Of a DNA stretch of 64,000 nucleotides, positions 809-51,419 are shown piece after piece. This stretch comes from Macrostomum lignano (lineage: Eukaryota): assembly GCA_002269645.1 (NCBI GenBank), contig NIVC01000319.1, forward strand, positions 310,001 to 374,000. The letters run 5' to 3'. How positions within the stretch are numbered: the stretch's first letter is position 1; every line of letters starts with the position of its first letter. Under the pieces are notes generated by a model that ran no database searches, was not told the origin of the DNA, and saw nothing but the letters and a program-made list of their open reading frames with translations. The translations under genes and the position numbers were made by a program.

Positions 809-2450
809 TATTCTTTTGGCAATAAACTAGGCCCTAAACCAATAGTAAAAGACAAAGCCAAGTCCAAATGTCTCCTAAATTAAAAAAACGTAGGAATAAT
901 ATAGTTATAGTATACTATTACTAGAGCTATCCTAGGCATAAGGCCTCTAGAGAACTTATTTTGTCATATAAAACTATATTAGGGCCCTACTACTATATTA
1001 TAGAGATAATTTCAACTTAGGCTTAAAATTTCAATGTGTAATAAAAGAGGAAAACATAATAATTATAATTATAATTTATAATGAAATTATAGGCCCTAAT
1101 TTAAAAAAATATTATAACTAGGAGCTAGGACTAGGCATAGTAGCTAGGCCCTAGCCTATGCCTAGAGGCTAGGGCGCCTATGGATATAATTTGTAAAAAT
1201 CTATGCATTCAATTAATAAGTACGGCCTACATTATTAGAGTATGTCTATGATGCTGATCAAATTATCTAGATTGTGACAATTTTCTCAGATTTAATCTAA
1301 CCTTTTTGTTAGCGTCCAGATTAGCTAATATCAGGATCAAAAACACATCATAGACACACGACACTCGCTCGCGCCACTAAAGCTAAAGGTGGCCGACTTG
1401 CGGTCGGCCGGCGGCTTGTCCGTTGTCCGGCTGCTTTGAGCTCGGACTTACTGGCGGTTTCTATTTTTTTGAAAGTTGAGTTCGCGCCACACTACGAGTA
1501 AGGTCTATAACTCAGTATATCATTTTTCGAAGATAGGCAAAAAAACAGCCACATAGCATTGCCTGATAGTAAAATATTTTTGAAAAACGTACCAAGAACT
1601 TGATAAAGACAGATTTAATAGTTAGAATCGTCACTTACACTTACTCCACACTAGGGGAAAATTTTCTTTTACAGATATCGTTCGAGAGCCTCAGCTCCTG
1701 TCAATGACTCAAGGTTGTTTTAAAACTTGAAAAAAGATATTGATTGAATGATTCCAGAAGGGAGCAATTATTTCATGCAGATATGCTTTTGCGCAGCTGA
1801 CTATAATTTCGGAATACATGTACATGTACATTCGCGGTACGCCAGAGAGGCAAAGTAAACTTCCGCCAAAATACAGGCCCGCTCCCTCCGGCCCCCATTT
1901 TGGTTGGTCTTGACCCACGATCCCTCACCGGTTTTTGGTTGGCACCACAGAAGACTCGATTAGCACACTTCCTCTTCAGGGCACTTCTGAAGTTAAGATC
2001 GAATCAATAGAGATAAACTTTTGGTCGGAAATTGGTTGTAGCGTGATCTGGCACATCACAGGGGCTGTTAATGAGCGTGCGATATATGTACATGTATACA
2101 TCAATAGGCCGTATCATGTAGCCCATAGCCTTGTCGCGACTTTCCTAGTCATTTCTTAGTTCACCTTCACTTGTCTCTGTTTACTCTGTTTTCTCTCTTC
2201 TCTGTCCAGCTCAATCTTGTTATTCTTATCTCTCTCTCTCCCTTGCTGCGTTCTGATTGGCTCTCCGTTCTCGCCTCTTTCCTCAGTCGCGCACTCCACC
2301 CCCTCTCTTTATTATCTGCAATTTAAACCCCCTAAGTTAATGTCTGGTATAAATATACTTGTTTGGGCCCTGCGCCCACTTACTGGCTTATCTTAGATTC
2401 AATTTAACTCCAAGTAACTCTCTAGTCTTTAGTTTAGTATTTTTTCTACA

Positions 2451-2463
2451 TGGCGCCCAATGT
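2451..2463 (+). other. Primer-binding site complementary to the tRNA-Lys(CUU) 3' end (second copy at 4291-4303)
   Basis: TGGCGCCCAATGT directly after the LTR CA end, compared with the known Lys(CUU)-type PBS TGGCGCCCAACGT (one G:U wobble). Confidence 0.8.
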
Positions 2464-2669
2464 AAAATAATTTAGTCATTAAGTCAATTCAGTAAGGCTG
2501 GCAAAGGCCATGCCATCGTCGTAGCCCTCCACCAGTCTCCTCGTCTCATCGTTTGTCGACTGCGCCCTCCCATCTCGTCAACTGTCGGCCGGAGCAGTCT
2601 CATCCCATCTCATCTCGTCTCGACTGTCTGCCGGTGCTCCTTCATCTACATGTAGTCGTCGCTCATTGT

Positions 2670-3660
2670 CTGCCGGGGGTGCGTCCTGCGGTGTCCTCGG
2701 TCTCTCTCGGTTTCAAATTCTCGGCCGGGGCGCCTCAGGGCTCGCCTGCCGGATCGTCTCTTCGCTCATCGCCTGCCGGATCGTCTCTTCGCTCATCGCC
2801 TGCCGGATCGTCTCTTCGCTCTTCGTCTGCCGGGGGTGCGTCCTGCGGTGTCCTCGGTCTCTCTCGGTTTCAAATTCTCGGCCGGGGCGCCTCGGGGCTC
2901 GCCTGCCGGATCGTCTCTTCGCTCTTCGTCTGCCGGGGGTGCGTCCTGCGGTGTCCTCGGTCTCTCTCGGTTTCAAATTCTCGGCCGGGGCGCCTCGGGG
3001 CTCGCCTGCCGGATCGTCTCTTCGCTCTTCGTCTGCCGGGGGTGCGTCCTGCGGTGTCCTCGGTCTCTCTCGGTTTCAAATTCTCGGCCGGGGCGCCTCG
3101 GGGCTCGCCTGCCGGATCGTCTCTTCGCTCTTCGTCTGCCGGGGGTGCGTCCTGCGGTGTCCTCGGTCTCTCTCGGTTTCAAATTCTCGGCCGGGGCGCC
3201 TCGGGGCTCGCCTGCCGGATCGTCTCTTCGCTCTTCGTCTGCCGGGGGTGCGTCCTGCGGTGTCCTCGGTCTCTCTCGGTTCAAATTCTCGGCCGGGGCG
3301 CCTCGGGGCTCGCCTGCCGGATCGTCTCTTCGCTCTTCGTCTGCCGGGGGTGCGTCCTGCGGTGTCCTCGGTCTCTCTCGGTTCAAATTCTCGGCCGGGG
3401 CGCCTCAGGGCTCGCCTGCCGGATCGTCTCTTCGCTCTTCGTCTGCCGGGGGTGCGTCCTGCGGTGTCCTCGGTCTCTCTCGGTTCAAATTCTCGGCCGG
3501 GGCGCCTCGGGGCTCGCCTGCCGGATCGTCTCTTCGCTCTTCGTCTGCCGGGGGTGCGTCCTGCGGTGTCCTCGGTCTCTCTCGGTTCAAATTCTCGGCT
3601 GGGGCGCCTCAGGGCTCGCCTGCCGGATCGTCTCTTCGCTCATCGCCTGCCGGATCGCCT
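2670..3660. repeat. GC-rich 102/103-bp tandem array inside the first internal region of the LTR element
   Basis: About 9 copies of GGGGCGCCTCGGGGCTCGCCTGCCGGATCG...GG(T)TTCAAATTCTCGGCC. The second internal region (4291-4936) has only one copy. Confidence 0.95.
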
Positions 3661-5607
3661 CGTTAATTCGTCATTCAATTTTTTCTTTCACAATGTAAAA
3701 AATTAAAATAATTTTTTAGGGGGGAGGGTAGATGCAGTCAGTTTTTTCATTGGTTATACTCGTAAAAATTTATTCATTAAAATCGCACACGTGAAATTTC
3801 TTGGTCAATTTTGCATTCACTCTAGTCTCCACAGTTTTTGTATTGAAATTCTTAGTCGTATTTGTAGCTCGTACACCATTGTTAAATTTGTTTTAAAGTT
3901 GTTTCTTGAACTCTAATTCATAATTCTATTGGTACTCGAAAATTCAAAAAATGTTCCATTTTTTGGGGGAGTGTCGCGACTTTCCTAGTCATTTCTTAGT
4001 TCACCTTCACTTGTCTCTGTTTACTCTGTTTTCTCTCTTCTCTGTCCAGCTCAATCTTGTTATTCTTATCTCTCTCTCTCCCTTGCTGCGTTCTGATTGG
4101 CTCTCCGTTCTCGCCTCTTTCCTCAGTCGCGCACTCCACCCCCTCTCTTTATTATCTGCAATTTAAACCCCCTAAGTTAATGTCTGGTATAAATATACTT
4201 GTTTGGGCCCTGCGCCCACTTACTGGCTTATCTTAGATTCAATTTAACTCCAAGTAACTCTCTAGTCTTTAGTTTAGTATTTTTTCTACATGGCGCCCAA
4301 TGTAAAATAATTTAGTCATTAAGTCAATTCAGTAAGGCTGGCAAAGGCCATGCCATCGTCGTAGCCCTCCACCAGTCTCCTCGTCTCATCGTTTGTCGAC
4401 TGCGCCCTCCCATCTCGTCAACTGTCGGCCGGAGCAGTCTCATCCCATCTCATCTCGTCTCGACTGTCTGCCGGTGCTCCTTCATCTACATGTAGTCGTC
4501 GCTCATTGTCTGCCGGGGGTGCGTCCTGCGGTGTCCTCGGTCTCTCTCGGTTCAAATTCTCGGCCGGGGCGCCTCAGGGCTCGCCTGCCGGATCGTCTCT
4601 TCGCTCATCGCCTGCCGGATCGCCTCGTTAATTCGTCATTCAATTTTTTCTTTCACAATGTAAAAAATTAAAATAATTTTTTAGGGGGGAGGGTAGATGC
4701 AGTCAGTTTTTTCATTGGTTATACTCGTAAAAATTTATTCATTAAAATCGCACACGTGAAATTTCTTGGTCAATTTTGCATTCACTCTAGTCTCCACAGT
4801 TTTTGTATTGAAATTCTTAGTCGTATTTGTAGCTCGTACACCATTGTTAAATTTGTTTTAAAGTTGTTTCTTGAACTCTAATTCATAATTCTATTGGTAC
4901 TCGAAAATTCAAAAAATGTTCCATTTTTTGGGGGAGTGTCGCGACTTTCCTAGTCATTTCTTAGTTCACCTTCACTTGTCTCTGTTTACTCTGTTTTCTC
5001 TCTTCTCTGTCCAGCTCAATCTTGTTATTCTTATCTCTCTCTCTCCCTTGCTGCGTTCTGATTGGCTCTCCGTTCTCGCCTCTTTCCTCAGTCGCGCACT
5101 CCACCCCCTCTCTTTATTATCTGCAATTTAAACCCCCTAAGTTAATGTCTGGTATAAATATACTTGTTTGGGCCCTGCGCCCACTTACTGGCTTATCTTA
5201 GATTCAATTTAACTCCAAGTAACTCTCTAGTCTTTAGTTTAGTATTTTTTCTACAAGCCTTAACTAACCGCGGCCTCTCATATGAGTCCACGACCACGGC
5301 ATGCAGTCGTCCATCACCCAATAATCTGCAGAGAAGCCATGGATACTGGTAAAAAGGCAAAACGAGATAAGTAAAAGGATCGGAACCTAAAGGCACAGTC
5401 CTTGCATGTAATAATATACAGGTGCATCATTACTGCAATCCCAAATGCGTATCCAAGCACAAGATCTTCTCCTGTTTGCAGTCTTCTTTGTAGCTCATAT
5501 AGTTTTTAGCCAATAGATACAAAAAAGCAAACAGCAGAAAAGACAGCCACCCCGCCATGTACGCACTGATGAGAATTCGACTGATACAAATAGGTTAATA
5601 ACGGCAA

Positions 5608-5613
5608 TTTATT
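5608..5613 (-). promoter_or_regulatory. Candidate polyadenylation signal of the SMARCC gene
   Basis: TTTATT on + (AATAAA on -) about 600 nt downstream of the stop at 6207. Confidence 0.35.
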
Positions 5614-6206: not shown

Positions 6207-9200
6207 CTACTGCGGCCCGGCCTGGTCCGTCTCCATTGGCTGCGGCCCCTCCGCCTGGGCAGCGGCAGGCGGCTGCTCTGGCGCCCTGTCCGGCACCGGG
6301 GGCATCTCCGAGTCCGAGGGCGCGGCGCCGCGCGCCTCTGAGGCCAACGAAGGCGGCGGAGGCGCCGCCGGCGACGTCACAGAATCGCCGGAGGGGGTCA
6401 CCGAAGCGGCGGCCGGCGCAGACGCTGGGGCCTCGTCGAGGGCTGCGGACAGAGTCGGAGGAGCGGCGGCGGTTGACTCAGCGCCCTGAGGAGCTTCAAC
6501 AGCCGGACCGGCCGCAGCTCCGGCAGCCGAGGCGACACTCGAAGCCTGCGGGGCGGCCGGCAGTTGCGGCTGGGCGGACAGCGAAGGAGGCTGCGGAGTT
6601 GCCGGCTGCTGCGACGTCGGGGGCGGCGGCGGTGGCGGCGGAGGCATGGCGGAATCGGAAGTTGGAACAGTCGATGCCTGAGCAGTCTGCTCAGCCAATT
6701 GCTGCTGCTGCTGCTGCTGGCGGACTTCTTGAGCGGCCAGCTGGCGAGCGCGCTGCTCGGCCACGCGGTTCATCTCTTGGTAGAAGGCCTGGCGCTCCTG
6801 CAGCAGCTGCTGTCGCTGGGCTTCCAGCACTTCCCGCTCTCTGTCCATCAGCGCCTCCAGCTCCTGGAAGTGGCGCAGTTTGGTTTCAATCTTCTTCATC
6901 TGGGTCTCCACCAGCGAGGCCACCAGGCTCTTGATCTTCTTCTCCTCCACCTGGGCCAGGTGCTTGGCTTTGACAGCAGCGGCGGCCAGAACGGACGCGG
7001 CAGCGGCGCTCATCGTCTCCTTGGGATCGGCCGGGGCTGCGGCGGCGGCAGCGGGCGGCTGGCCGCTGGTCTCATTGGCCGCGTCAGCCGGCTCCTTATC
7101 GCCGGCTTCGGTTGAGGCAACCTCAGCAGCAGCTGCGGAAGCAGCCGGAGGACTCTTGGGCTTGGCGGCTTCACCTGCAGCGGGATCAGTCGTCACCGGC
7201 TCGTCGCCATTCGTTTTCGCGGCGGCGGCGGCGACAGACTCAGAGGAAGCAGCGGCGGCCGGGGCACCGCCGGAGTCGTCGCCTTCCTTCTTGACAGAGG
7301 CGGCGTCGCCGGCGGACTCGGCGGATGCGACAGCAGCTGGTGGCGCAGCGTCAGCCGTGGCAGCCAGAGCAGCGGAAGCGGCGTCCTCGGAGGCAGCAGA
7401 CTTGTCAGCAGCAGCAGCAGGCGGAGCTCCGTTGCCCAGCGAGCTGGTGGCGGCCGCGGAGGCCTCCTTGTTGGCGCCGACGCTCTGCTGGTGAGCCTTG
7501 AGCACGCAGTTGGGAATCTCGTCCCTCATCTTGGCGTACTCGTCCAGAGCAGCCTTGGTGGCGGCGCTGGCAATCCTGGATCAACAGTGGCAGCCAGGAA
7601 GGCCACGGTGCACATGATGGGGTTGCCGGCCTTGCTGAAGGGAATCGGCTGGTGGATCAGCGGGCCCAGCGCCTCCTCGGCGCCCTCTAAAAACGGATCC
7701 TCGATCGGCAGCTTCAGGAAGTGCAGCACGCACTCCTCCTGGGTGCGGGACCCCACGTGCTCGGCCACTCGGTTCCAGTCGTCTTTGAATAGCTCAAGGC
7801 CCTCCAGCAGGCTCAGCGTCTCCTGGTCCGTCCAGTCCGACTTGCGGCTGGCCGGCGGCTTGTCCGGCTGCTTCGAGCTCGCCTCGGACTTTTGTCCGGC
7901 GGCGGACTGCGCTGCCGACTGAGCCGACGGCGCCTGTTGCTGCTGCTGTTGCGACTGAATCGCCGCCGTGCCGCCGGGCACTCCGGTGCCGCTGCCCTGC
8001 TGGGAGTCGCCGCTGGCAGCTGCCCCAGACACCGCGGGACTGTCCGCAGCGGAAGCCGCAGATGAGACCCCATGACCGTTGGAGGTCACAGTCGCTGTTG
8101 TGGTTGTCGTAGAGGCTGCGGTTGAGGCGGGCACCGCGGCGGTGGCGGCGGCGGCTGATACTGAAGCTTCGCTGGTGACGACAGCGGTTCCGCCGTTGCC
8201 GCCGCCAACATTGAGGAAGGGCGGAGCGGGCTTGAATGGCGGGTTGACGGGCGCCAGTCCGGCCGGGGTGTCCGCCAGCACGTGGAAATGCGAGGTTGAC
8301 GGCGGCCCCAGAGCGGCGAGCTTGGCTTCGTTGTCAACCTGGGAAATCGGCGAGCTTCTACTTGACAAGTGCGGATGGGGTCGGACAAAGACTTTAACTC
8401 TACTGTTGGGTCGGACAAAGACCTAAACTCTACTGTGGGGCCGGACAAAGACCTAAACTCTACTGTGGGGCCGGACAAAGACTCAAACTCTACTGTGGGG
8501 TCGGACAAAGAGTCAAACTCTACTGTGGGGTCTAACAAAGGCTCAAACGCAAGCCCAGACTCAAGTTCAGCCTCACCTGGTAGTTGATGAGGCCCCACTG
8601 TTCCAGGAAAGCGTGCACCCTGAGGATGCCGCACACGTCGCCATGCAAATTCCGCCTGCAGGCAGTGAAGGTGAGGTACTCCTGCGGGTTGAGCCTGTAG
8701 GTGTCAATCATGAAGTTGCGATAGGCCAGGTAGGCCTCAGGAGTTTTGCTCTGTTTGCCCTTGGTGAAGAACTCGGGCAGGCCGCGCTCCTCCAGCGCGT
8801 GGATGGAGTTGTAGTCGAACCAGGTGGCGTAGGAGGGCACGATGATGACGTGCGCCTGCTCAGTCACCGTCACGTCACCGCCAGCGGCAGTCTGAAAATT
8901 TTAGAAAAAATGCAATACAATTGTGATACATTGCTTTTTGCAGTTGATTATCCACAGCACAATTTCTCTATACATTAGCAAAACACACTATTTACTGTCT
9001 AAACAGTAGTAGAAATGCTAAAATGGCTAGGGTTTAGGTTAGGGCTGGGGTTTAGGTTAGGGTGAAGTTTAGGTTAGGGCTGGGGTTTAGGTTAGGGTGA
9101 AGTTTAGGTTAGGGCTGGGGTTTAGGTTAGGGTGAAGTTTAGGTTAGGGCTGGGGTTTAGGTTAGAGCTGGGGTTTAGGTTAGGGCTGGAGTTTAGGTTA

Positions 9201-12200
9201 GGGCTGGGGTTTAGCTTACGACCGGGGTTTATTTCTGAGATTGTGTCGGCAGTTGTTTGTTGCAGACCGAGTGTCCTCAGAAATTTGAAATTTCGAGCTT
9301 GTGAAAGAGGCCCAATAAATGCTTCATGTTGCCTCTCCCAGGTAAGCAACAGATCGGAAATTAATCTCACAGGCTGTCTGCACTACTACCAGTAGTGTGA
9401 CCTCACCTGCCCGTGCTCATCCTCTCCGTCTTCGACTTTGCCGCCACCGCCGCCCTCCGTGCCGCCGACCGTAGCGGCTGTGGCGTCCGCGTCCTCCTCG
9501 GCGCCGCCGCCAGCGCGGCCGGACCCGCCGCCGGGCGCTTCCGCGTCCATGGGCTCGCCGGAGGGCTGGCTGCCTGTCGCAGAAGCAGCAGCGGAGGCGC
9601 CCGTCTCCCGGCGCGCCTTCTTGCCGCCAGCGCCGCCGCCGGAAGCTGCCGCCGCCGCCGAGACGTTGGCAGCCGACGACTTCCGGCCGGAACCGGCGGT
9701 TCCGCCAACGCCGGAACGGGAATTCGACGAAGGCGTCGATGCGGCCACCGCCTGGGCGCCGGTCGACGAGGCTGGCGGCGAAGGCGATCGCTTTCGCTTC
9801 TGAATTTTCTTCTCCCGCTTGAGCTCCACGAACTCGGAAACCGAGTAGTAGCGGGGCGGCGCCGCTGGCTTGCGGCCGGTGCGCCGGGCGAACTCCTGGT
9901 ACTCCACCAGGAAGTCCTCCTCCGGCGGGAACTCGCACTGCTCGTCCAGCGTCAACAGGTAAGCGGCGTCCAGCTCCCAGGGACCGTCCGGGACGCAGCG
10001 GGTCACCTGGCGAAGGAGTGGGATTGATTAGGGAATCTAGTGTCTCAGGCAGAGGGAATCTAGTGTCTCAGGCAGAGGGAATCTAGTGTCTTAGGCAGAG
10101 GGAATCTAGTGTCTCAGGCAGAGGGAATCTAGTGTCTCAGACGGAGGAAATCTAGTGTCTTAGGCAGAGTGAATCTAGTGTCTCAGGCAGAGGGATCTAG
10201 TGTCTCAGGCAGAGGGAATCTAGTGTCTCAGGCAGAGGGAATCTAGTGTCTCAGGCAGAGGGAATCTAGTGTCTTAGGCAGAGGGAATCTAGTGTCTCAG
10301 GCAGAGGGAATCTAGTGTCTCAGGCAGAGGGATCTAGTGTCTCAGGCAGAGGGAATCTAGTGTCTCAGGCAGAGGGAATCTAGTGTCTTAGGCAGAGGGA
10401 ATCTAGTGTCTCAGGCAGAGGGAATCTAGTGTCTCAGGCGGAGGAAATCTAGTGTCTTAGGCAGAGTGAATCTAGTGTCTCAGGCAGAGGGATCTAGTGT
10501 CTCAGGCAGAGGGAATCTAGTGTCTCAGGCAGAGGGAATCTAGTGTCTCAGGCAGAGGGAATCTAGTGTCTCAGGCAGAGGGAATCTAGTGTCTCAGGCA
10601 GAGGGAATCTAGTGTCTCAGGCAGAGGGATCTAGTGTCTCAGGCAGAGGGAATCTAGTGTCTCAGGCAGAGGGAATCTAGTGTCTTAGGCAGAGGGAATC
10701 TAGTGTCTTAGGCAGAGGGAATCTAGTGTCTTAGGCAGAGGGAATCTAGTGTCTCAGACAGAGGGAATCTAGTGTCTCAGGCAGAGGGAATCTAGTTTCT
10801 CAGGCAGAGGGAATCTAGTGTCTCAGGCAGAGGGAATCTCAGTGTCTCAGGCAGAGGGATCTTAGTGTCTGAGGCAGAGGGAATCTAGTGTCTCAGGCAG
10901 AGGAACTCTAGTGTCTCAGGCAGAGGGAATCTCAGTGTCTCAGGCAGAGGGAATCTCAGTGTCTCAGGTAGAGAGAATCTCATACACTGGATGGAGAGAA
11001 AATCTCATATTGTTCAGAATGGAGAGGGAATCTCATATGCGGGATGAAGAGGGAATCTCGTATTCTGGGTGGAGAGGGAATATCATATTCTGGGTGGAGA
11101 GGGAATCTCATATTCTGGGTGGAGAGGGAATCTCATATTCGGAATGGAGAGGGAATCTCATATTCGGAATGGAGAGGGAATCTCATATTCTGGGTGGAGA
11201 GGGAATCTCATATTCTGGGTGGAGAGGGAATCTCATATTCTGGGTGGAGAGGGAATCTCTTATTCTGGGTGGAGAGGGAATCTCATATTTGGAATGGAGA
11301 GGGAATCTCTTATTCTGGGTGGAGAGGGAATCTCATAGTCGGAACGGAGAGGAAATCTCATTCAGAAATGGAGAAGGAATCTCAAGTCCTTGCATAAAGA
11401 ACGAATCGCAGATAGAGAGGAAATCTCATATGAGATGAAAGAAATCTCATATGAGATGGGCGAATCTCTTTACCCAGAATCCGCCTGAGCTGGGATTTAT
11501 CCCATGCTGATTACCTCAACCTCCAGCTCAGCGGGGCTAGTGTAAAACACATCATAGCTGGACACGGTGCCCTTCCAATGCACCACCGAGTGCTTGCCCT
11601 CCTTGAAGGCCGGGGTGACCTTGTCCTCAAGCAGCTGCTGGGCGGCGGCGGCCGGGGCAGCGCTGGCCGGGCCGTACACCAGGTGTGTGCAGGCGTCCTC
11701 GGTGTCAGCCAGCTCGAGGCCGTGTCGCTGGCAAATGTCCAGCAGGCGAGTCCGGATGTCCTCGGGCACGTCCGATTTGATGTGCACCCGCGGCAGCGAC
11801 CACAGCTTGGAGTCCAGCAGCTCCTTGCGCATCAGCGCCAGCATTTCCAGATTCTTCTCCAGCCAGGAGGCCTTGTGAAAGTCCAGCCTGCGCCAGCCCT
11901 GCTCGCCTTTGAAGCGGAACACAGTCAGGAACATCTGGCAGAGCGCGCCGCCCGGCTGGAAGTCCAGGAACAGCCGGCCGGGCAGGCGGGTCGGATACGG
12001 CGGCGACTTTGCCTGGCGGCGGACCTGCTCCTCCTGGAAGCAGAGCAGCTGGTAGCAGATGGAGGCCAGGCTCTTGTTGGTTGGCGGCTCCGTCTGCATG
12101 AGTTTCTTGTGATTGCGGGTGAGCCAGGTGCGGACCGTATCGAACTCGGCGATCACCTCCGGGTGCTCGAAGAACCGCTGACTGGGCGCGGTGTCCTTCT

Positions 12201-12216
12201 TGCGCTGCAGACTCAT
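6207..12216 (-). CDS. SMARCC2: SWI/SNF (BAF) core subunit SMARCC / BAF155-170 / Moira / SWI3 homolog, 4 exons, one apparent 1-nt frameshift
   Basis: Exons 12216-11515, 10006-9407, 8891-8577, 8338-6207, all GT-AG phase 0. N-terminus ...[23 protein letters not shown]...LFLDFQPGG...GWRRLDF; SWIRM ([19 protein letters not shown]...[26 protein letters not shown]); SANT ([40 protein letters not shown]); coiled coil ([31 protein letters not shown]). Frame break at about 7578. Confidence 0.95.
8376..8545. repeat. 30-bp minisatellite in SMARCC intron 3
   Basis: About 5 copies of GGGGTCGGACAAAGACTCAAACTCTACTGT with variants. Confidence 0.9.
9027..9215. repeat. Telomere-like 17/18-bp alternating minisatellite in SMARCC intron 2
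   Basis: GGGGTTTAGGTTAGGGCT alternating with GAAGTTTAGGTTAGGGT; each unit contains TTAGG and TTAGGG. Confidence 0.9.
10030..11460. repeat. 23-bp minisatellite grading into a 25-bp variant, filling SMARCC intron 1
   Basis: AGAGGGAATCTAGTGTCTCAGGC (about 10030-10970), then GAGAGGGAATCTCATATTC(TGGGTG/GGAATG) (about 11020-11340), sharing the core GAGGGAATCT. Confidence 0.95.
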
Positions 12217-12886
12217 GGCGTGACTGGGACAGCGGCGAGCTGGAAAGCGGACTTTATGGTTTATCAACTGACCATTGGAAAGAAATTGGAGTCAAGTAAG
12301 CTGCATGTTGTTTCCACTTTACTTTGCTTTTGTACAATAACATTTTCAACAAGGCCAACACAACACTACTTAAACAAAACAACCTCATGTGAATATAATT
12401 AACATATTTAGCATAACTGGAACAACACAAATTTATTATATTATCAGCTAAAATGATGAATTATGATTAATTATAAAATATTTAGCAGCACTAATTCAAT
12501 AAACAGTATATATGAATATAATATTTTGCTTTGCTTTGATAAATAAAGTATATTCAGATCTATTTTCCTATTTTGTTGAAAAAATTTCTTCTAATTTGTG
12601 ATCAGACTAAGTTTTGCCAGAAGCAAGTTTTTTAATTTACTTTTACTTAATTTGCTAATATAATACTCAATAGTATTATAAAACTAAATATTGATATTTA
12701 AAACTTTAACCCTTCAATTTAATTGAATTCAATGAAAATTTAATGTAACAAACAATAGAATTATTGACTAAAATATTTTAGTAAGGTGACAACTAATATG
12801 ATATAACTTTTGGTACTTGGTTAATTGGTTTTGTAGCATTTAGTCACTTTATTACCTATCTAGATTGGTTAGATATTGTGCATATA

Positions 12887-22749: not shown

Positions 22750-24163
22750 GAATCTGGGTTAGCGCTACCCAGGTCAAAAGCCATGCAGACCTGCTCAACA
22801 CGATCCAAGGCAGAGCGTGTAGGCTCATCTGCAACGCCACCAGGTCCACGCCCTTTGCTGGCATGGGGGCCTTCCTTAATCTTCCGCCTCTTGACCTCTT
22901 CATCAGGGGTGAGGCGGCTAGAACGACGCGGCGTCTAATTGATGCCGGCGTCAAATTCATTTACATGAGAGCACCTGCTAAGCGGAACCTTGTCCCGCAT
23001 AGCGATCTGTGCCTCAACTTTCTCAACGAGTGTCAGGCCAATCGCGTCTTCACCGATGGCATTGCCTCAACGCTCAACCTGAGACAGCGCTACTCCGTAG
23101 CTATCGACTCGCGCGATAATATCAATGACCATTGGAACCCTGGTGAGCTTCATTGCTACACCGACGGTTCTAAGCAGTCAGCCAACACCGGCTTTGGTGT
23201 TGGAATCTTTCTGAACGGGAGGGTCATCGCTACCCACGCTCAATACACTGGGGTCAACTCCAGTGTTTTCCAAAATGAAGTTCTGGCCATCAGCTCCTGC
23301 ACTGCAGAGCTTCTCGCCACTGGCGTTACTGGTAAGAACATCATTTTCCATTCGGACAGCCAAGCTGCCTTGCACGCCATCAGTGGCTGCAGCACCAACT
23401 CTGCTACAGTCCTTGACTGTATCAAACTCCTCAATGTGTTGGGTTCCGCCAACAAAATTACCCTTAAGTGGGTTCCGGGGCATGTGGGGATCCGAGGAAA
23501 TGAGTTGGCTGACACCCTTGCAAAAGTTGGTGCCTCCGGCTCCTCTCTCGGCCCCGAACCTCTTGTCCCGATTCCTGGCTGTGTCATCGACTCACGCATC
23601 AAAGCGTGGATCAGGACTCAGCACCGCTCGACTTGGGCGAACCGCACGAACTGCAGGCAATCCAGAGGCGCTGTCCCTCAGCCCTCTCACCAGCTCCGGA
23701 AGCTCCTCTTGCGCCTCTCGCGCAGAGACATCCGGGCTGCCACCATGACCCTCTCTGGTCACGGCTGCTTCTCCAGGCACCAGTACCTGCAGGGCAACGC
23801 CACCAACGCCACCTGTAGTTTCTTCAACTCAGGTGACGAAACCGCTGAGCATTTCGTCAGCATCTGTCCCGCCTTCACGCGGGCCAGACTCACTTACCTC
23901 GGGCCACACACATCTATTACTGAAGCGTGCAAACCCGAAAACTTTAATCAGCTCATGCGCTACCTTCGGGCCACCCGCAGGGCTGAACTCTCCTTTCCAG
24001 AGAGCACCATAGCTGCTGGCGACACTGGGGGACCTCCCTGGGCGGCGCCAACCCTCCGTCCATAGCGACGCGTCGGCCGTTCAGGGACTAGCGGAATGGG
24101 CGCCCGCGCCTTCCCGCTGTGTCCCCTTCGGGACAGCCCTGCAGCTAAGTCAAGTAAGTCAAG
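22750..24163 (+). mobile_element. 5'-truncated non-LTR retrotransposon with RNase H (LOA/Lian-like, I group)
   Basis: Open frame 22752-24065: RT thumb (...TRSTPFAGMGAFLNLPPLDLFI), RNase H (YTDGS, QNEVLAI, HSDSQAAL, KWVPGHVGIRGNELAD), degenerate CCHC (CSFF...ETAEHFVSICP). (TAAGTCAAG)2 tail; 12-bp TSD ACCTGGTCAGTA at 22738-22749 and 24164-24175. Confidence 0.92.
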
Positions 24164-24607: not shown

Positions 24608-25332
24608 CATTAGGATGAAACTAAGTGTTGTCTATTTGTCTCAGGAACTGTCACATCCTGCAAATGAAACTGGACAGCTTATATGCCCAAGATCAACTTG
24701 GAAATTAATGTCAACAGGCTCCTTTCTTGCGACTGTAATTTGCATTGCGGCTCAATGACTCAATACAAAGCACTCAATACAATACAAGTAACTTTTCCTC
24801 CGTGAATCGTCTACATGTATGCATGTATAACTGGTTACGTTTGGTTTTGTTACCTGTAAGCAGTGCCCCTTTCGGGGCGACGTTTGCCCTCGTACGGTGG
24901 TTAATGACCGCTCGGGCACTGCCCGTTTGCGCTCTCTCCCTGGCTCTGTCCACTTTGTGTGCCATATGTACTTTCTCTCCCTCGGTCGCGCCCCTCCCTC
25001 TCCGTCTCTTTGCCCCACGCGCACCCACCTCCCCCGATCTGGTTTTAAGGCCTTCTTGGGTTGCAATAATTACATACAAATTATTAGTATAGGAGCTCTT
25101 AGAACTTTCAATTTAGTTTACTTTTTCAAGGCGATTGTAAAAACTGTTTAAAATCAAGCAAAGCTTTTCATGGCCTGCTGGAAGCTTCTTTATTTTGTCT
25201 TTTTACAAGTTTAAATAATTCAGAGCAGCAACAAACTATGATTGCTACTGATAAAGGCAATACAAGTAGTATAATTGAGAACATAATGGAGTAAAAAAAA
25301 TAGATGAGGTAGAGGCTAGAATGACATGATTA

Positions 25333-27247
25333 CACCATTTTACCCTCGACCCCGAACAAGGAGAACCTCGAAACTGACAAACTCCTCTTCAATATTGACA
25401 CTCCATGGTCGAGCACTCAAAATCCACAATCAATATCGACAGATCAAGCTTCAATTTTGACAAACTCTGGTTCAATTTTGACAATGCACGTTTAGTCAAC
25501 TTCTCCTGGGAGAATTCGGTAACAAATTAATCCAATGAAAGCCTGAACGGGGCTGAAGTGAGCTGTGCAAAATCAGCTTATTCTGACTTTGCTTTTTGGA
25601 TCTACAAGTATTGATAAAATTTATTTTTCTCTATCCTTTACACACACAGACTAAAATAGCCTGACTGGTTGGGCTGCAAAGTCTGATTCTATTTTGACAG
25701 AGTTGCTTCAAAACTGAAACTCTATGGTTTGTGTACCCAAAAAGTCCGCTTCATTTTTGACAACTCCGAATCAACATCGAACAGTTTACAATCGATTTTG
25801 ACTAAGATGAATCTTTCTATCCAGGGATGCTTGCTAGAGTCCCTGCTCTCTCAAGGGACTCTAGCAAAAGGCCGGTCATTTAACATCCCAAGACAGCAAG
25901 CATCCACCCAGATAGCAAGCATCCACCCAGATAGCAAGCATCCACCCAGATAGCAAGCATCCACCCAGATAGCAAGCATCCACCCAGATAGCAAGCATCC
26001 ACCCAGATAGCAAGCATCCACCCAGATAGCAAGCATCCACCCAGATAGCAAGCATCTTGCAGATAGCAAGCATCATCCAGGTAGCAAACATCCACCCAGA
26101 TAGCAAGCATCCACCCAGATAGCAAGCATCCACCCAGATAGCAAGCATCCACCCAGATAGCAAGCATCCACCCAGATAGCAAGCATCCACCCAGATAGCA
26201 AGCATCCACCCAGATAGCAAGCATCCACCCAGATAGCAAGCATCCACCCAGATAGCAAGCATCCACCCAGATAGCAAGCATCCACCCAGATAGCAAGCAT
26301 CCACCCAGATAGCAAGCATCCACCCAGATAGCAAGCATCCACCCAGATAGCAAGCATCCACCCAGATAGCAAGCATCTTGCAGATAGCAAGCATCATCCA
26401 GGTAGCAAACATCCACCCAGATAGCAAGCATCATCCAGATAGCAAGCATCCACCCAGATAGCAAGCATCCACCCAGATAGCAAGCATCCACCCAGATAGA
26501 AGCATCCACCCAGATAGCAAGCATCCACCCAGATAGAAGCATCCACCCAGATAGCAAGCATCTTGCAGATAGCAAGCATCTTGCAGATAGCAAGCATCAT
26601 CCAGGTAGCAAACATCCACCCAGATAGCAAGCATACCTGGATAGAAAGATTCCTATACATGTACTCGTCGATACATGCAGCCAGTACCCCTTCTCCCAAA
26701 TAGCCAAGTATCCCCCCCCCTACTCAAGAGAGAAATCTTAGTAAAAATTGTCAAAATCTATTTCAAAAAATGTCTTAGTCAAAATCGATTGTAAACTGTT
26801 CGATATTGATTCGGAGTTGTCAAAAATGAAGCGGACTTTTTGGGTACACAAACCATAGAGTGTCAGTTTTGAAGCAACTCTGTCAAAATAGAATCAGACT
26901 TTGCAGCCCAACCAGTCAGGCTATTTTAGTCTGTGTGTGTAAAGGATAGAGAAAAATAAATTTTATCAATACTTGTAGATCCAAAAAGCAAAGTCAGAAT
27001 AAGCTGATTTTGCACAGCTCACTTCAGCCCCGTTCAGGCTTTCATTGGATTAATTTGTTACCGAATTCTCCCAGGAGAAGTTGACTAAACGTGCATTGTC
27101 AAAATTGAACCAGAGTTTGTCAAAATTGAAGCTTGATCTGTCGATATTGATTGTAGATTTTGAGTGCTCGACCATAGAGTGTCAATATTGAAGAGGAGTT
27201 TGTCAGTCTCGAAGTTCTCCCTGCTCAAAATCGAGGGTAAAATGGTG
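25333..27247. mobile_element. Non-autonomous DNA element with about 475-bp near-identical TIRs, TA TSD and a minisatellite core
   Basis: 25333-about 25808 is the reverse complement of about 26775-27247 (TA|CACCATTTTACCCTCGA ... TCGAGGGTAAAATGGTG|TA); no transposase. Confidence 0.9.
25890..26640. repeat. 19-bp minisatellite inside the long-TIR element
   Basis: CATCCACCCAGATAGCAAG, about 39 copies; the same unit occurs in opposite orientation at 51420-52130. Confidence 0.97.
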
Positions 27248-27485
27248 TAATAGCGAGGTAGATATTTAATTCAAAGCGCTTCTTTTAGAAGCAAAAAACG
27301 ATTGCACGGAAGAAGCTGATTAGCTGAGGCCAATATTTACAGAAAAGCCTGAAGCTCGCGAACCAAGCATTGAGCATGCGCGATCGATGAGGTCAAAAGC
27401 TGATTGTCTCAATGAGAACTGCCGACAGTGCTGAGGCAGCCCTGCGGGGGGCTCAAGCGGCACAATGCACTGTCAGCTCTGCCGC

Positions 27486-46510: not shown

Positions 46511-48349
46511 GTTGGATGATGGGATTCGGCTGATGAATTTCAGGGTTCCGGTGGAGTTCCGGTGATGGGAGTTCTTCCCCTTTCTCCTCCAGAGGAGGAG
46601 TTGGCCTCGTCTTAATACTAAAGTTGGTGCGATGTTTGTCTGTCTGTATGTTGCAATTTTTCTCCTAGACTACTTGCAACTCAGCGTTGAAACTTATATG
46701 GGTAAACTGCAAATTTTCCGGGTTGGGTTTATAGCTATTTTAATCTTTCATTTTTATATTTTAAGATCCCTAAAAAAGCAGAAATAATAAAACAATAGGG
46801 AATATGATCCACCTTGCGCAACTCTTAGTGATTGCGCCACAACAGCTGGCCTATCTGTGTAGTGTATTCTTTTAGCTGAAGGGGTGTAACTGGGCCAGTT
46901 GGCATCAATTTTTAGTGATTACGCCACAACTTTCTCCTATCTCGGCAGTGTATTTTCTCTCCAATGGGGGAATGGGGGCATTCTCAGTGTACAATCGGAC
47001 CCTAGCTCACTGGCTGATTGTATAGACAATTGCGCAACGATATGTTTTCTGATTTTCAATAGGCAGCCCTGTGTATTTGTTGGACAGTAAAATTCAATGA
47101 ATAAACTTGCGAGCCTCCCACTGCTGCAGGCAGTGAACGTACACTCAATAGTTCAATTCCTTAAAACGGGAAATTTCAAAGCCAAACTGTTCCTTGAGTT
47201 TTAAACTTTAAGAGAAGAGACTTATATTGCTGGAAAGAAGTTGCAGTGCTGAGTTAGGGGATATAAGTTGTTTGCTCTAAATGTGAAAATTAAAAGCACA
47301 GCATTCAAAAAGTGATTTCCATACTTTTAACGTTTTGCAAAGATTGTACTCCATTTCGGGGGTTCAATGAGGGTTTGACAGACTCCCAACAGTGGGGGGG
47401 TTCAATTTCTAGCTGCACTGCGTATTCGAAGGGGTTCGGTCGCTGTGTATTGGAGGGTTGATTTAGATTGCGCAATTTTTTTGTTAACTTTAACCGAGGC
47501 TGATACTGACTGCCTGAGAAATAATTTGCGCAATTTAATTGGTTCAATGTTTTAACGGCGCCTTTCAACACGCAGCTGTGTGTAGCTCTAACCCCTAACC
47601 ATAACCAATGAATTCTGAGAGCTGGGTTCTGTTTGACAGAGAAATTTCGATTGAGTCCAGTTACACGGAGAGGATTTTCGCGGAGAGGATTTTGATGGTG
47701 TTCAGTTTCACGGAGACAATTTCTGTTTCGCGGAGAGTTCAGGAAATGGGATTCCGGTGATGGGAGTTCTTCCCCTTTCTCCTCCAGCGGAGGAGTTGGC
47801 CTCGTTCCATATACTAAAAATGGTCTGTCGGTATGTGTGTGTGTGTGTGATCGATTTTAGCAAAAATGGCTCAACCGATTTTCTTCGAACTTGCACCATT
47901 CGATCAGAAATTTTTCCGTGACGGTACATGCATCGTGGCTAAGAAATTGCTCGATGCTAAAGGGATTAAATATTCGAAAAACATGCTTTTTTGCAAAGGT
48001 CAAGCAGCTCTTTCGACTTGAAATGCATTGTAAGAATGCTAGCAGAAAAAACTGACTGGTTGAATTCTGATTCTGAAATAGATTGCATCACAATACACTT
48101 TATTTATCGTCTGTGTACTGGCTGAATTTGACACTCAATTGAATTGCGTCACAGCTTTGAGGGTGAAAGTATAGTGCAGTACTGAATTTATATTACGTAA
48201 CCATATTGTTAGCTTTCATAGACACTGGTACTGACTTGCCTAAGAAATTGATTATGTCATAACTGCTTCGTGTGACTTTTTACTCTACCTGACTTGGTGT
48301 GAGTGTTGAATTATATAAGTGGTACAAATTCACTGATAACTTCGATGAG

Positions 48350-48477: not shown

Positions 48478-51375
48478 AGATTACTGCACTCGATAAGCTA
48501 AGGATTATTGCTCTTGGCAAACCAAGGATTACTGCACTCGATAAGCCAAGGATTATTGCTATTAATAAACCAAGGATTACTGCACTTGGCAAACCAAGGA
48601 TTACTGCACTCGATAAGCCATGGATTATTGCTATTAATAAACCAAGGATTACTGCACTCGATAAGCCAAGGATTATTGCTATTAATAAACCAAGGATTAC
48701 TGCACTCAATAAACCAAGGACTATTGCTCTTGGCAAACCAAGGATTACTGCACTTGATTAATCAAGGATTATTGCCATTAATAAACCAAGGATTACTGCA
48801 CTCGATAAGCCAAGGATTATTGCTATTATTAAACCAAGGATTACTGCACTCGAAAAGCCATGGATTATTGCTATTAATAAACCAAGGATTACTGCACTCG
48901 ATAAGCCAAGGATTATTGCTATTAATAAACCAAGGATTACTGCACTCGATAAGCCAAGGATTATTGCTATTAATAAACCAAGGATTACTGCACTCGATAA
49001 GCCATGGATTATTACTATTAATAAACCAAGGATTACTTACTGCACTTGGCAAACCAAGAATTACTGCACTCGATAAGCCATGGATTATTGCTATTAATAA
49101 ACCGAGGATTACTTACTGCACTTGGCAAACCAAGAATTACTGCACTCGATAAGCCATGGATTATTGCTATTAATAAACCAAGGATTACTGCACTCGATAA
49201 GCCAAGGATTATTGCTATTAATAAACCAAGGATTACTGCACTCGATAAGCCAAGGATTATTGCTATTAATAAACCAAGGATTACTGCACTCAATAAACCA
49301 AGGACTATTGCTCTTGGCAAACCAAGGATTACTGCACTTGATTAATCAAGGATTATTGCCATTAATAAACCAAGAATTACTGCACTCGATAAGCCATGGA
49401 TTATTGCTATTAATAAACCGAGGATTACTTACTGCACTTGGCAAACCAAGAATTACTGCACTCGATAAGCCATGGATTATTGCTATTAATAAACCAAGGA
49501 TTACTGCACTCGATAAGCCATGGATTATTGCTATTAATAAACCAAGGATTACTGCACTCGATAAGCCAAGGATTATTGCTATTAATAAACCAAGGATTAC
49601 TGCACTCGATAAGCCATGGATTATTACTATTAATAAACCAAGGATTACTTACTGCACTTGGCAAACCAAGAATTACTGCACTCGATAAGCCATGGATTAT
49701 TGCTATTAATAAACCAAGGATTACTGCACTCGATAAGCCAAGGATTATTGCTATTATTAAGCCAAGGATTACTGCACTCGATAAGCCATGGATTATTGCT
49801 ATTAATAAGCCAAGGATTACTGCACTCGATAAGCCAAGGATTATTGCTATTATTAAGCCAAGGATTACTGCACTCGATAAGCCATGGATTATTGCTATTA
49901 ATAAGCCAAGGATTACTGCACTCGATAAGCCAAGGATTATTGCTATTAATAAACCAAGGATTACTGCACTCGATAGCCAAGGATTATTGCTATTAATAAA
50001 CCAAGGATTACTGCACTCAATAAACCAAGGACTATTGCTCTTGGCAAACCAAGGATTACTGCACTTGATTAATCAAGGATTATTGCCATTAATAAACCAA
50101 GGATTACTGCACTCGATAAGCCAAGGATTATTGCTATTATTAAACCAAGGATTACTGCACTCGAAAAGCCATGGATTATTGCTATTAATAAACCAAGGAT
50201 TACTGCACTCGATAAGCCAAGGATTATTGCTATTAATAAACCAAGGATTACTGCACTCGATAAGCCAAGGATTATTGCTATTAATAAACCAAGGATTACT
50301 GCACTCGATAAGCCATGGATTATTACTATTAATAAACCAAGGATTACTTACTGCACTTGGCAAACCAAGAATTACTGCACTCGATAAGCCATGGATTATT
50401 GCTATTAATAAACCGAGGATTACTTACTGCACTTGGCAAACCAAGAATTACTGCACTCGATAAGCCATGGATTATTGCTATTAATAAACCAAGGATTACT
50501 GCACTCGATAAGCCAAGGATTATTGCTATTAATAAACCAAGGATTACTGCACTCGATAAGCCAAGGATTATTGCTATTAATAAACCAAGGATTACTGCAC
50601 TCAATAAACCAAGGACTATTGCTCTTGGCAAACCAAGGATTACTGCACTTGATTAATCAAGGATTATTGCCATTAATAAACCAAGAATTACTGCACTCGA
50701 TAAGCCATGGATTATTGCTATTAATAAACCGAGGATTACTTACTGCACTTGGCAAACCAAGAATTACTGCACTCGATAAGCCATGGATTATTGCTATTAA
50801 TAAACCAAGGATTACTGCACTCGATAAGCCATGGATTATTGCTATTAATAAACCAAGGATTACTGCACTCGATAAGCCAAGGATTATTGCTATTAATAAA
50901 CCAAGGATTACTGCACTCGATAAGCCATGGATTATTACTATTAATAAACCAAGGATTACTTACTGCACTTGGCAAACCAAGAATTACTGCACTCGATAAG
51001 CCATGGATTATTGCTATTAATAAACCAAGGATTACTTACTGCACTTGGCAAACCAAGAATTACTGCACTCGATAAGCCATGGATTATTGCTATTAATAAA
51101 CCAAGGATTACTGCACTCGATAAGCCAAGGATTATTGCTATTATTAAGCCAAGGATTACTGCACTCGATAAGCCATGGATTATTGCTATTAATAAGCCAA
51201 GGATTACTGCACTCGATAAGCCAAGGATTATTGCTATTATTAAGCCAAGGATTACTGCACTCGATAAGCCATGGATTATTGCTATTAATAAGCCAAGGAT
51301 TACTGCACTCGATAAGCCAAGGATTATTGCTATTAATAAACCAAGGATTACTGCACTCGATAGCCAAGGATTACT
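48478..51375. repeat. 48-bp (2 x 24-bp) satellite with about 1311-bp higher-order repeat
   Basis: AAACCAAGGATTACTGCACTCGAT + AAGCCAAGGATTATTGCTATTAAT. Variant patterns recur at an offset of 1311 (48762/50073, 49033/50344, 49425/50736). Confidence 0.97.
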
Positions 51376-51419
51376 GCGCTTGATAAGCTTGGCTACATGT
51401 ATAGGATTATTCTTATCCA

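What the first reader, a model, noticed from the sequence alone, without database searches (positions are those of the whole stretch)
2132..5255. Three-LTR tandem mini-retroelement inserted as one unit (LTR-int-LTR-int-LTR, single 5-bp TSD)
Seen: three 319-bp LTRs, a tRNA-Lys PBS after LTR1 and LTR2, a PPT before LTR2 and LTR3, and one AGCCT TSD around the whole. This is a tandem TRIM-like structure, best described in plants (for example Cassandra) and less so in invertebrates. The two internal regions differ in length (1521 vs 646 bp), so the units are not simple copies. Inference: it arose by integration of a dimeric cDNA or by LTR-LTR unequal recombination.
Basis: partly seen in the sequence, partly recalled or inferred. 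Interest (0 to 1): 0.7.

Follow-up and report, generated by a model that had tools for sequence, protein, structure and literature searches.

The report
Tandem three-LTR mini-retrotransposon in a flatworm
A very young, protein-less LTR retrotransposon sits just downstream of a flatworm chromatin-remodelling gene as two units sharing a middle LTR, a layout already well described in plants and seen in tapeworms and bivalves, so it is a clean example of a known kind.

Summary
Three 319-bp LTRs (2132-2450, 3972-4290, 4937-5255) are 100% identical and have TG..CA ends. A TGGCGCCCAA primer-binding site follows LTR1 and LTR2. A TTTTTTGGGGGAG polypurine tract precedes LTR2 and LTR3. One AGCCT duplication flanks the whole structure.

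The units carry no gag or pol and match no Rfam family, so the element is non-autonomous and is neither Cassandra nor a retrozyme. The basic unit is 1284 bp, slightly above the strict TRIM size limits.

The two internal regions are the same sequence. Internal 1 has 875 extra bp, eight more units of a 103/102-bp minisatellite, and there is one C/T difference.

The host is a Macrostomum flatworm. The element lies about 950 bp past the stop codon of a SMARCC/moira gene.

"LTR-internal-LTR-internal-LTR with one TSD" (L3I2) is the commonest tandem TRIM form in maize, and tandem TRIMs are reported in cestodes and bivalves. A single TSD fits unequal LTR-LTR recombination (favoured) as well as insertion of a tandem cDNA, so "inserted as one unit" is not shown. 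An assembly false duplication of two alleles is not excluded. No other copy could be reached with the tools.

Verdict: new member of a known kind, low to moderate interest.

The parts
2127..2131 (+). Left copy of the 5-bp target-site duplication, AGCCT
2132..2450 (+). LTR1 (319 bp, TGT...ACA). It carries an inverted CCAAT box at 2256-2260 and a TATA box (TATAAAT) at 2348-2354. There is no AATAAA downstream of the TATA box and no heat-shock element.
2451..2463 (+). PBS 1, TGGCGCCCAATGT. It matches the complement of the tRNA-Lys(CUU) 3' end at 10/10, then 12/13; the tRNA sequence is from memory.
2451..3971 (+). Internal region 1 (1521 bp), non-coding. It consists of a 218-bp leader, the minisatellite and a 3' AT-rich tail.
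2669..3653 (+). Minisatellite inside internal region 1. It has one 157-bp unit (containing three copies of a 27-bp sub-repeat), then 4 units of 103 bp, 3 units of 102 bp and the last unit. Positions 2669-3543 (875 bp) have no counterpart in internal region 2. T at 3600 against C at 4565 is the only other difference.
3718..3732 (+). Second polypurine run with a T-run just upstream (TTTTTT at 3712-3717, then AGGGGGGAGGGTAGA). It is also present at 4683-4697 and may act as an internal plus-strand primer site (inference only).
3959..3971 (+). PPT 1, TTTTTTGGGGGAG, abutting LTR2
3972..4290 (+). LTR2, the shared middle LTR, identical to LTR1 and intact
4291..4936 (+). Internal region 2 (646 bp). It has the same 218-bp leader with the PBS at 4291-4303, a single minisatellite unit, the same 3' tail, and the PPT at 4924-4936.
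4937..5255 (+). LTR3, identical to LTR1 and LTR2
5256..5260 (+). Right copy of the target-site duplication, AGCCT
6207..12267 (-). Neighbouring host gene, SMARCC/moira, with SWIRM-assoc_2, SWIRM, Myb/SANT and SWIRM-assoc_1 exons. Its stop codon is at 6207-6209. The only AATAAA on its strand downstream is at about 5608-5613. The element lies beyond that signal and in convergent orientation.

Best explanation
This is a very young, non-autonomous LTR retrotransposon of a Macrostomum flatworm genome. It is TRIM-like, with a 1284-bp basic unit of 319-bp LTR, 646-bp non-coding internal region and 319-bp LTR. It is present as an L3I2 tandem, that is, two units sharing the middle LTR.

How the unit works, inferred from its anatomy and from the established LTR-retroelement replication cycle:
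- Transcription starts downstream of the CCAAT/TATA promoter in U3 and ends in the next LTR.
- The RNA is packaged and copied by gag and pol supplied in trans by an unidentified autonomous element.
- Minus-strand synthesis is primed by a tRNA, most likely tRNA-Lys, on TGGCGCCCAA next to the 5' LTR.
- Plus-strand synthesis is primed at the GGGGGAG tract next to the 3' LTR.
- The partner's integrase joins the TG..CA ends across a 5-bp staggered cut, giving the AGCCT duplication.

How the tandem most likely arose (inferred, about 0.5 to 0.55):
- One ordinary insertion was followed by unequal homologous recombination between the 3' LTR of one copy and the 5' LTR of the other.
- The partner copy was the sister chromatid, the homologous chromosome, or a free cDNA or 1-LTR circle.
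- This is the reciprocal product of solo-LTR formation and it keeps the original single TSD.

The two internal regions differ only in the copy number of an unstable 103-bp minisatellite (nine units against one) and at one base. That difference either predates the exchange (two alleles or two cDNAs) or arose afterwards by slippage.
For: - LTR identity, ends, PBS, PPT and TSD are all present at the exact junctions.
- LTR2 is intact and flanked directly by a PPT and a PBS, so there is no nested insertion.
- There is no coding capacity. One search found only short ORFs, Pfam gave nothing above its cut-offs, and the 381-aa repeat ORF had no protein homologue.
- The internal regions are identical apart from 875 bp of minisatellite and one base.
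- Host assignment: the best SMARCC hit is UniRef100_A0A1I8FJZ9, 98% and 89% identical over two exons. Accessions on either side of it in that UniProt series are listed as M. lignano proteins in bioRxiv 10.64898/2026.03.11.711021.
- L3I2 with one TSD is the commonest tandem TRIM form in maize and was validated there by PCR (PMC4717578).
- Unequal crossing-over was the authors' explanation for tandem ta-TRIMs in Echinococcus (PMC4558846), and it is one of the explanations on offer for TRIM and kangaroo tandems (PMC11899658).
- This window is itself full of unequal-exchange products: 76 TRF rows and a roughly 1.2-kb macrosatellite. M. lignano is reported as 21% LTR elements and 15% simple and tandem repeats (PMC5730564).
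Against: - No second copy of the family could be examined, so mobility, the autonomous partner and the ancestral minisatellite length are untested.
- The structure does not separate post-insertion recombination from integration of a tandem cDNA.
- Internal region 2 is not a one-step deletion derivative of internal region 1. Its unit type (TT/CC/CAG) cannot be made by a single crossover between the first and last units of internal region 1. Several events therefore separate the two, yet there is no substitution in 957 bp of LTR. This is slightly awkward for a pure sister-chromatid model, unless the minisatellite mutates very fast.
- Perfect identity of all repeats is also what an assembly false duplication would give.
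- The tRNA identity rests on a recalled tRNA sequence, because no tRNA gene lies in the window.
Confidence: 0.55

Rival explanations
1. The tandem was made during retrotransposition and integrated as one piece. One route is a read-through RNA from a tandem or 1-LTR-circle template. Another is aberrant strand transfer between two co-packaged RNAs carrying different minisatellite lengths. A third is cDNA-cDNA recombination before integration.
For: - There is a single 5-bp TSD around the whole structure.
- No canonical AATAAA lies downstream of the TATA box in the LTR, so termination in the middle LTR could be leaky.
- Reverse transcriptase is known to change direct-repeat copy number (established retrovirology). 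Two internal regions with different minisatellite lengths but otherwise identical sequence are therefore expected under this model.
- The unit variants show that internal region 2 is not a one-step derivative of internal region 1.
- This route is discussed as possible for TRIMs and rice tandems (PMC11899658).
Against: - Nothing in the sequence requires this route, since the same end product arises from unequal LTR exchange.
- No other tandem copy with a different TSD could be found, because no genome of the host was searchable.
- In the one flatworm precedent the authors favoured unequal crossing-over.
Confidence: 0.25
2. The tandem is an assembly artefact. Two alleles or homeologous copies of an ordinary two-LTR insertion, one with nine minisatellite units and one with a single unit, were strung together through the shared identical LTR (false haplotypic duplication).
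For: - All three LTRs and all unique internal sequence are 100% identical apart from one base and the minisatellite length. That is what two alleles would look like.
- The M. lignano assembly is described as substantially redundant, and the species as a hidden allotetraploid (PMC5730564; PMC12801592).
Against: - The whole structure is only 3.1 kb, which is easily spanned by single long reads.
- A 319-bp overlap is short for an overlap assembler to join reads falsely.
- L3I2 structures have been confirmed by PCR elsewhere.
- No reads are available here, so this explanation is neither supported nor excluded directly.
Confidence: 0.12
3. Two independent insertions (one element landing in or beside another), or a generic segmental tandem duplication that has nothing to do with retroelements.
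For: This genome makes many tandem duplications of arbitrary sequence, for example the 1.0-1.27-kb array at 39854-47850.
Against: - There is only one TSD.
- LTR2 is uninterrupted and bounded exactly by a PPT and a PBS.
- The repeat boundaries coincide with TG..CA ends.
- A PBS and a PPT sit at the correct junctions, and none is present outside the array.
An arbitrary duplication would not end on these features.
Confidence: 0.03

Closest known systems
Tandemly arrayed TRIMs (TA-TRIMs) of plants, L3I2 class, e.g. Zma-SMART and Wukong in maize (Gao et al. 2016, PMC4717578; PMC4528315)
   Same: [quoted passage not shown]
   Different: The host is an animal (a flatworm). The unit is larger (1284 bp, 319-bp LTR), and the internal region carries an expandable 103-bp minisatellite. 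I did not compare sequences with the plant families; no similarity is expected.
ta-TRIM of taeniid cestodes (Koziol et al. 2015, PMC4558846)
   Same: It is a non-autonomous small LTR element in Platyhelminthes. A few tandem copies are reported and attributed to unequal crossing-over, and the LTR carries its own promoter.
   Different: ta-TRIM has an 8-nt PBS for tRNA-Leu and mostly 4-bp TSDs. This element has a Lys-type PBS and a 5-bp TSD, so it is a different family with a different expected integrase partner.
Tandem LTR-retrotransposon structures of full-size elements (rice, Arabidopsis, cotton, almond; also Drosophila, kangaroo centromeres, yeast Ty1/Tf1) (PMC11899658)
   Same: LTRs and internal regions alternate and are flanked by one TSD. 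The tandems are highly polymorphic in copy number. The same two candidate origins are under debate.
   Different: Those are mostly autonomous gypsy-type elements several kb long. This element is protein-less and miniature.
Cassandra TRIM (plants)
   Same: It is a TRIM that often forms tandem arrays with multiple LTRs.
   Different: Cassandra is defined by a 5S rRNA-derived segment in each LTR. No 5S or any other Rfam family matches here.
biv-TRIM of bivalves (PMC6934838)
   Same: It is an animal TRIM for which tandem copies and solo repeats were observed.
   Different: biv-TRIM lacks an identifiable canonical PBS. This element has a textbook PBS and PPT.

Membership tests
LTR retrotransposon (structural definition) | Long direct terminal repeats with TG...CA ends | tested here: met
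   Three 319-bp repeats are 100% identical and have TGT...ACA ends.
LTR retrotransposon (structural definition) | PBS complementary to a tRNA 3' end immediately after the 5' LTR | tested here: inconclusive
   TGGCGCCCAATGT starts at the first base after LTR1 and LTR2. It matches the recalled tRNA-Lys(CUU) complement at 10/10 and 12/13. No host tRNA gene was available to confirm this, and ARAGORN found none in the window.
LTR retrotransposon (structural definition) | Polypurine tract immediately before the 3' LTR | tested here: met
   GGGGGAG, preceded by T6, abuts LTR2 and LTR3 and occurs nowhere else in the window.
LTR retrotransposon (structural definition) | Target-site duplication of 4-6 bp | tested here: met
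   AGCCT lies at 2127-2131 and 5256-5260.
[quoted passage not shown] | No gag/pol coding capacity | tested here: met
   The longest ORF in the short unit is 92 aa. Pfam gave nothing above its cut-offs. The repeat ORF has no homologue among 5.8 billion proteins.
[quoted passage not shown] | Total length under 1000 bp and terminal repeats of 100-250 bp (strict definition, PMC6934838, PMC4717578) | tested here: not met
   The short unit is 1284 bp, the long unit 2159 bp and the LTR 319 bp. It falls within the broader set of Gao et al., in which 22% of subfamilies exceed 1 kb and 32% have LTRs over 250 bp. 'TRIM-like' is therefore accurate, but strict TRIM is not.
[quoted passage not shown] | Dispersed multicopy family mobilised in trans by an autonomous partner with the same PBS and TSD length | not testable with these tools
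   There is no other copy in the window. No searchable collection contains the host genome.
Tandem LTR-RT / TA-TRIM, class L3I2 | At least three LTRs alternating with internal regions, inner LTR shared, one TSD around the array | tested here: met
Tandem LTR-RT / TA-TRIM, class L3I2 | Structure verified as real rather than an assembly artefact (PCR or spanning reads) | not testable with these tools
   No reads are available.
Cassandra | 5S rRNA-derived promoter segment inside the LTR | tested here: not met
   cmscan of 1900-5500 against Rfam 15 at E up to 1 gave 0 matches.
Retrozyme | Hammerhead ribozyme in the terminal repeats | tested here: not met
   The same Rfam search gave 0 matches.
ta-TRIM (taeniid cestodes) | tRNA-Leu PBS of 8 nt and 4-bp TSD | tested here: not met
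   This element has a Lys-type PBS and a 5-bp TSD, against the description in PMC4558846.

The most novel reading that the evidence does not exclude
The L3I2 structure was produced during reverse transcription or by read-through transcription, for example from two co-packaged RNAs with different minisatellite alleles, and was integrated as a unit. Such tandems would then be themselves transposition-competent in Macrostomum. They would recur at many loci with different TSDs and could seed LTR-derived satellite arrays.
Probability: 0.2. Interest if true: 0.45.

Novelty: new member of a known kind. Interest (0 to 1): 0.25.

Why it matters
This is a textbook-clean and evidently very recent example of a tandem non-autonomous LTR element in a free-living flatworm that is a laboratory model. 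Small protein-less LTR elements and their tandems have been described mainly in plants. In Macrostomum the recent LTR census started from reverse-transcriptase domains (PMC12801592), so such elements would have been missed.

The zero LTR divergence implies that an autonomous partner was active recently. Because M. lignano is transgenic-tractable, the locus could serve two purposes. It could be a marker for line polymorphism, and it could be a test case for the open question of whether tandems arise by recombination or during retrotransposition.

The locus does not reveal a new mechanism. The practical value is mostly for annotation: a non-autonomous family, a hypervariable internal minisatellite, and possible false duplication.

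Tried and rejected
- Other copies through proteins. Exact look-up of two element ORFs (3951-4166, 4393-4671) in the contig index gave nothing on record. A homology search with the 381-aa repeat ORF gave no hit.
- Other copies through DNA. A scan of metagenome contigs with the LTR-end plus PBS 20-mer gave one hit, in a 65% GC contig with no other similarity to the window. I judged it a chance match. Scans of viral contigs and prokaryote genome contigs with the LTR 5' 20-mer gave 0 hits. No collection that holds the host genome was searchable, so copy number, solo LTRs and the autonomous partner remain unknown.
- The supplementary consensus sequences of the M. lignano LTR census are not held as text.
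- Cassandra and retrozyme readings were rejected because there is no 5S or hammerhead match.
- A heat-shock-responsive LTR, as in some M. lignano families, was rejected because the LTR has no HSE.
- A nested or double insertion was rejected because there is one TSD and LTR2 is intact.
- A hidden gag remnant was rejected.
- The 1.0-1.27-kb tandem array at 39854-47850 was inspected as a possible second tandem LTR structure. It shows no LTR, PBS or PPT anatomy.
Full report
**Observation**

I read 1900-5500 and compared the repeats directly.
- The three blocks 2132-2450, 3972-4290 and 4937-5255 are each 319 bp and identical at every base.
- Each begins TGT and ends ACA.
- The pentamer AGCCT precedes the first block (2127-2131) and follows the last (5256-5260).
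- The first base after LTR1 and after LTR2 opens TGGCGCCCAATGT. CATGGCGCCCAA occurs only at these two places in the 64-kb window, against 0.37 expected by chance with one mismatch allowed.
- TTTTTTGGGGGAG ends exactly at the first base of LTR2 and of LTR3 and occurs nowhere else.
- There is no PBS after LTR3 and no PPT before LTR1.

**The two internal regions**

The internal regions are 1521 bp and 646 bp. They share an identical 262-bp prefix and an identical 371-bp suffix. Cutting both at a repeat landmark shows the following.
- Each consists of the same 218-bp leader (PBS included) and the same 428-bp last segment (last repeat unit plus an AT-rich tail ending in the PPT).
- Internal region 1 has 875 additional bp between them. 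These are one 157-bp unit containing three copies of a 27-bp sub-repeat, four units of 103 bp and three units of 102 bp. TRF reports the array at 2796-3653 with period 103, 8.4 copies and 99% matches.
- The only other difference is T at 3600 against C at 4565.

The units are therefore copies of one sequence that differ in minisatellite copy number. They are not structurally different elements.

The repeat units carry small variants: TTT or TT, CAG or CGG, CC or CT. The single unit of internal region 2 (TT/CC/CAG) cannot be produced by one crossover between the first and last units of internal region 1. More than one mutational step therefore separates the two arrays.

**Coding and RNA content**
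- The short unit has no ORF longer than 92 aa.
- Pfam finds nothing above its cut-offs in any element ORF.
- The 381-aa ORF that runs through the minisatellite in all three frames has no homologue in the 5.8-billion protein set.
- An Rfam scan of 1900-5500 at E up to 1 returns nothing. There is no 5S segment, which is the Cassandra hallmark, no hammerhead (retrozymes), and no tRNA-like part.

The element is non-autonomous.

The LTR has an inverted CCAAT box at 2256 and a TATA box at 2348. There is no canonical AATAAA in the 95 bp between the TATA box and the LTR end, and there is no heat-shock element.

**Host and setting**
- The minus strand from 6207 to 12267 encodes a SMARCC/moira protein. 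Its exons match SWIRM-assoc_2, SWIRM, Myb/SANT and SWIRM-assoc_1.
- Its closest database relative is UniRef100_A0A1I8FJZ9, 98% and 89% identical over two exons.
- UniProt accessions on either side of it in that series are listed as Macrostomum lignano proteins in bioRxiv 10.64898/2026.03.11.711021.
- The window therefore comes from M. lignano (a paralogous or homeologous copy) or from a close congener.
- This fits the window's character: 76 tandem-repeat rows and TTAGGG tracts. It also fits the published description of that genome as 21% LTR elements and 15% simple and tandem repeats, with a redundant assembly (PMC5730564).
- The element lies about 950 bp beyond the SMARCC stop codon and about 350 bp beyond the only AATAAA on that strand. 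It is in convergent orientation. It is probably intergenic, although the 3' UTR end is not mapped.

**Mechanism**

The unit has everything needed in cis for the standard LTR-retroelement cycle and nothing in trans:
- a promoter in U3;
- a tRNA primer site, most likely for tRNA-Lys(CUU), matching 10/10 and 12/13 against the sequence as I recall it (no host tRNA gene was available);
- a PPT;
- TG..CA integrase ends;
- a 5-bp TSD.

It must be mobilised by an autonomous partner, which I could not identify. The zero divergence among 957 bp of LTR shows that the insertion and the tandem are very recent.

A single TSD around LTR-I-LTR-I-LTR has two classical explanations.
- Unequal homologous exchange. 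The 3' LTR of an inserted element recombines with the 5' LTR of its sister, its homologue or a free cDNA. This gives the tandem and, reciprocally, a solo LTR.
- Integration of a tandem cDNA.

The literature leaves both open (PMC11899658). For the one flatworm precedent, the authors favoured unequal crossing-over (PMC4558846).

I favour recombination at about 0.5 to 0.55. It needs only one ordinary insertion plus a process that this genome visibly performs all the time.

The minisatellite difference does not discriminate between the models. It can be allelic variation brought together by an inter-homologue exchange, slippage by reverse transcriptase, or later replication slippage.

A third possibility, at about 0.12, is that an assembler chained two alleles of a two-LTR insertion through the identical LTR. 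The perfect identity and the known redundancy of the assembly keep this open. The small size of the structure (3.1 kb) argues against it.

**Comparison with known systems**
- L3I2 with one TSD is the most frequent class of tandemly arrayed TRIMs in maize (63 of 93) and was confirmed there by PCR (PMC4717578).
- Tandem LTR elements are common and polymorphic in rice and other plants, and are reported from Drosophila, kangaroo centromeres and yeast (PMC11899658).
- Animal TRIMs with tandem copies are known in cestodes and bivalves (PMC4558846, PMC6934838).
- On membership, this element meets the structural definition of an LTR retrotransposon and of an L3I2 tandem.
- It meets the non-coding criterion of TRIMs but exceeds the strict size limits (under 1000 bp, LTR 100-250 bp). 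"TRIM-like small non-autonomous LTR element" is the accurate label.
- It is not Cassandra, not a retrozyme, and not the cestode ta-TRIM family, which has a tRNA-Leu PBS and a 4-bp TSD.

**What could not be done**

No searchable collection holds the host genome.
- Exact look-ups of element ORFs gave nothing.
- The homology search gave nothing.
- The one metagenome scan gave a single hit that I judged a chance match, in a 65% GC contig.
- The viral and prokaryote scans gave nothing.

Copy number, solo LTRs, other tandems, the autonomous partner and read support therefore remain open.

**Verdict**

"Inserted as one unit" is unproven and "not simple copies" is incorrect. The structure is a new member of a well-known kind, in a lineage where small non-autonomous LTR elements have not been catalogued. 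Interest is low to moderate (0.25).

Noticed in passing
window 39854-47850: A macrosatellite of about seven units of 1.0-1.27 kb, with 74-100% identity between units; 41099-42135 and 42136-43172 are identical. It has embedded 20/30/50/80-bp minisatellites, for example 46074-46518. No LTR, PBS or PPT anatomy is visible in the unit I read.
   Followed up: partly
window 25329-27251, and 51421-52125: A foldback-like structure: 479-nt inverted arms (25329-25807 and 26773-27251, 97% complementary) enclose a 19-bp minisatellite (25891-26634, about 40 copies). The same 19-bp repeat occurs in the opposite orientation at 51421-52125.
   Followed up: no
window 22863-24065 and 35916-36818 (+ strand); 37449-38126: Two ORFs carry RNase H domains (Pfam E = 1.7e-11 and 1.3e-07). 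A neighbouring ORF with no Pfam hit looks like the tail of a reverse transcriptase. These are probably fragments of non-LTR retrotransposons and are unrelated to the tandem element.
   Followed up: partly
window 6207-12267 (- strand): The SMARCC/moira gene has very GC-rich, low-complexity exons of about 67% GC. Minisatellites lie between or beside its exons (8376-8548 with a 30-bp period, 9025-9231, and 10030-11361 with 23/25-bp periods). It is 89-98% identical to a second M. lignano SMARCC fragment, which suggests a homeologous pair.
   Followed up: partly
window 43518-43547, 53457-53499, 9025-9231: Short interstitial telomere-type tracts are present: (CTAACC)5 and (TTAGGG) of about 7.7 copies, plus a degenerate GGTTAGGG-containing 18/35-bp repeat.
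   Followed up: no
window 48479-51388: A 2.9-kb minisatellite with a 24/48-bp period (about 120 copies at the 24-bp period) and higher-order structure.
   Followed up: no
window 3718-3732 and 4683-4697: A second polypurine run with a T-run just upstream (TTTTTT, then AGGGGGGAGGGTAGA) lies inside each internal region and resembles the 3' PPT. It could be a central plus-strand primer site. This is inference only.
   Followed up: no
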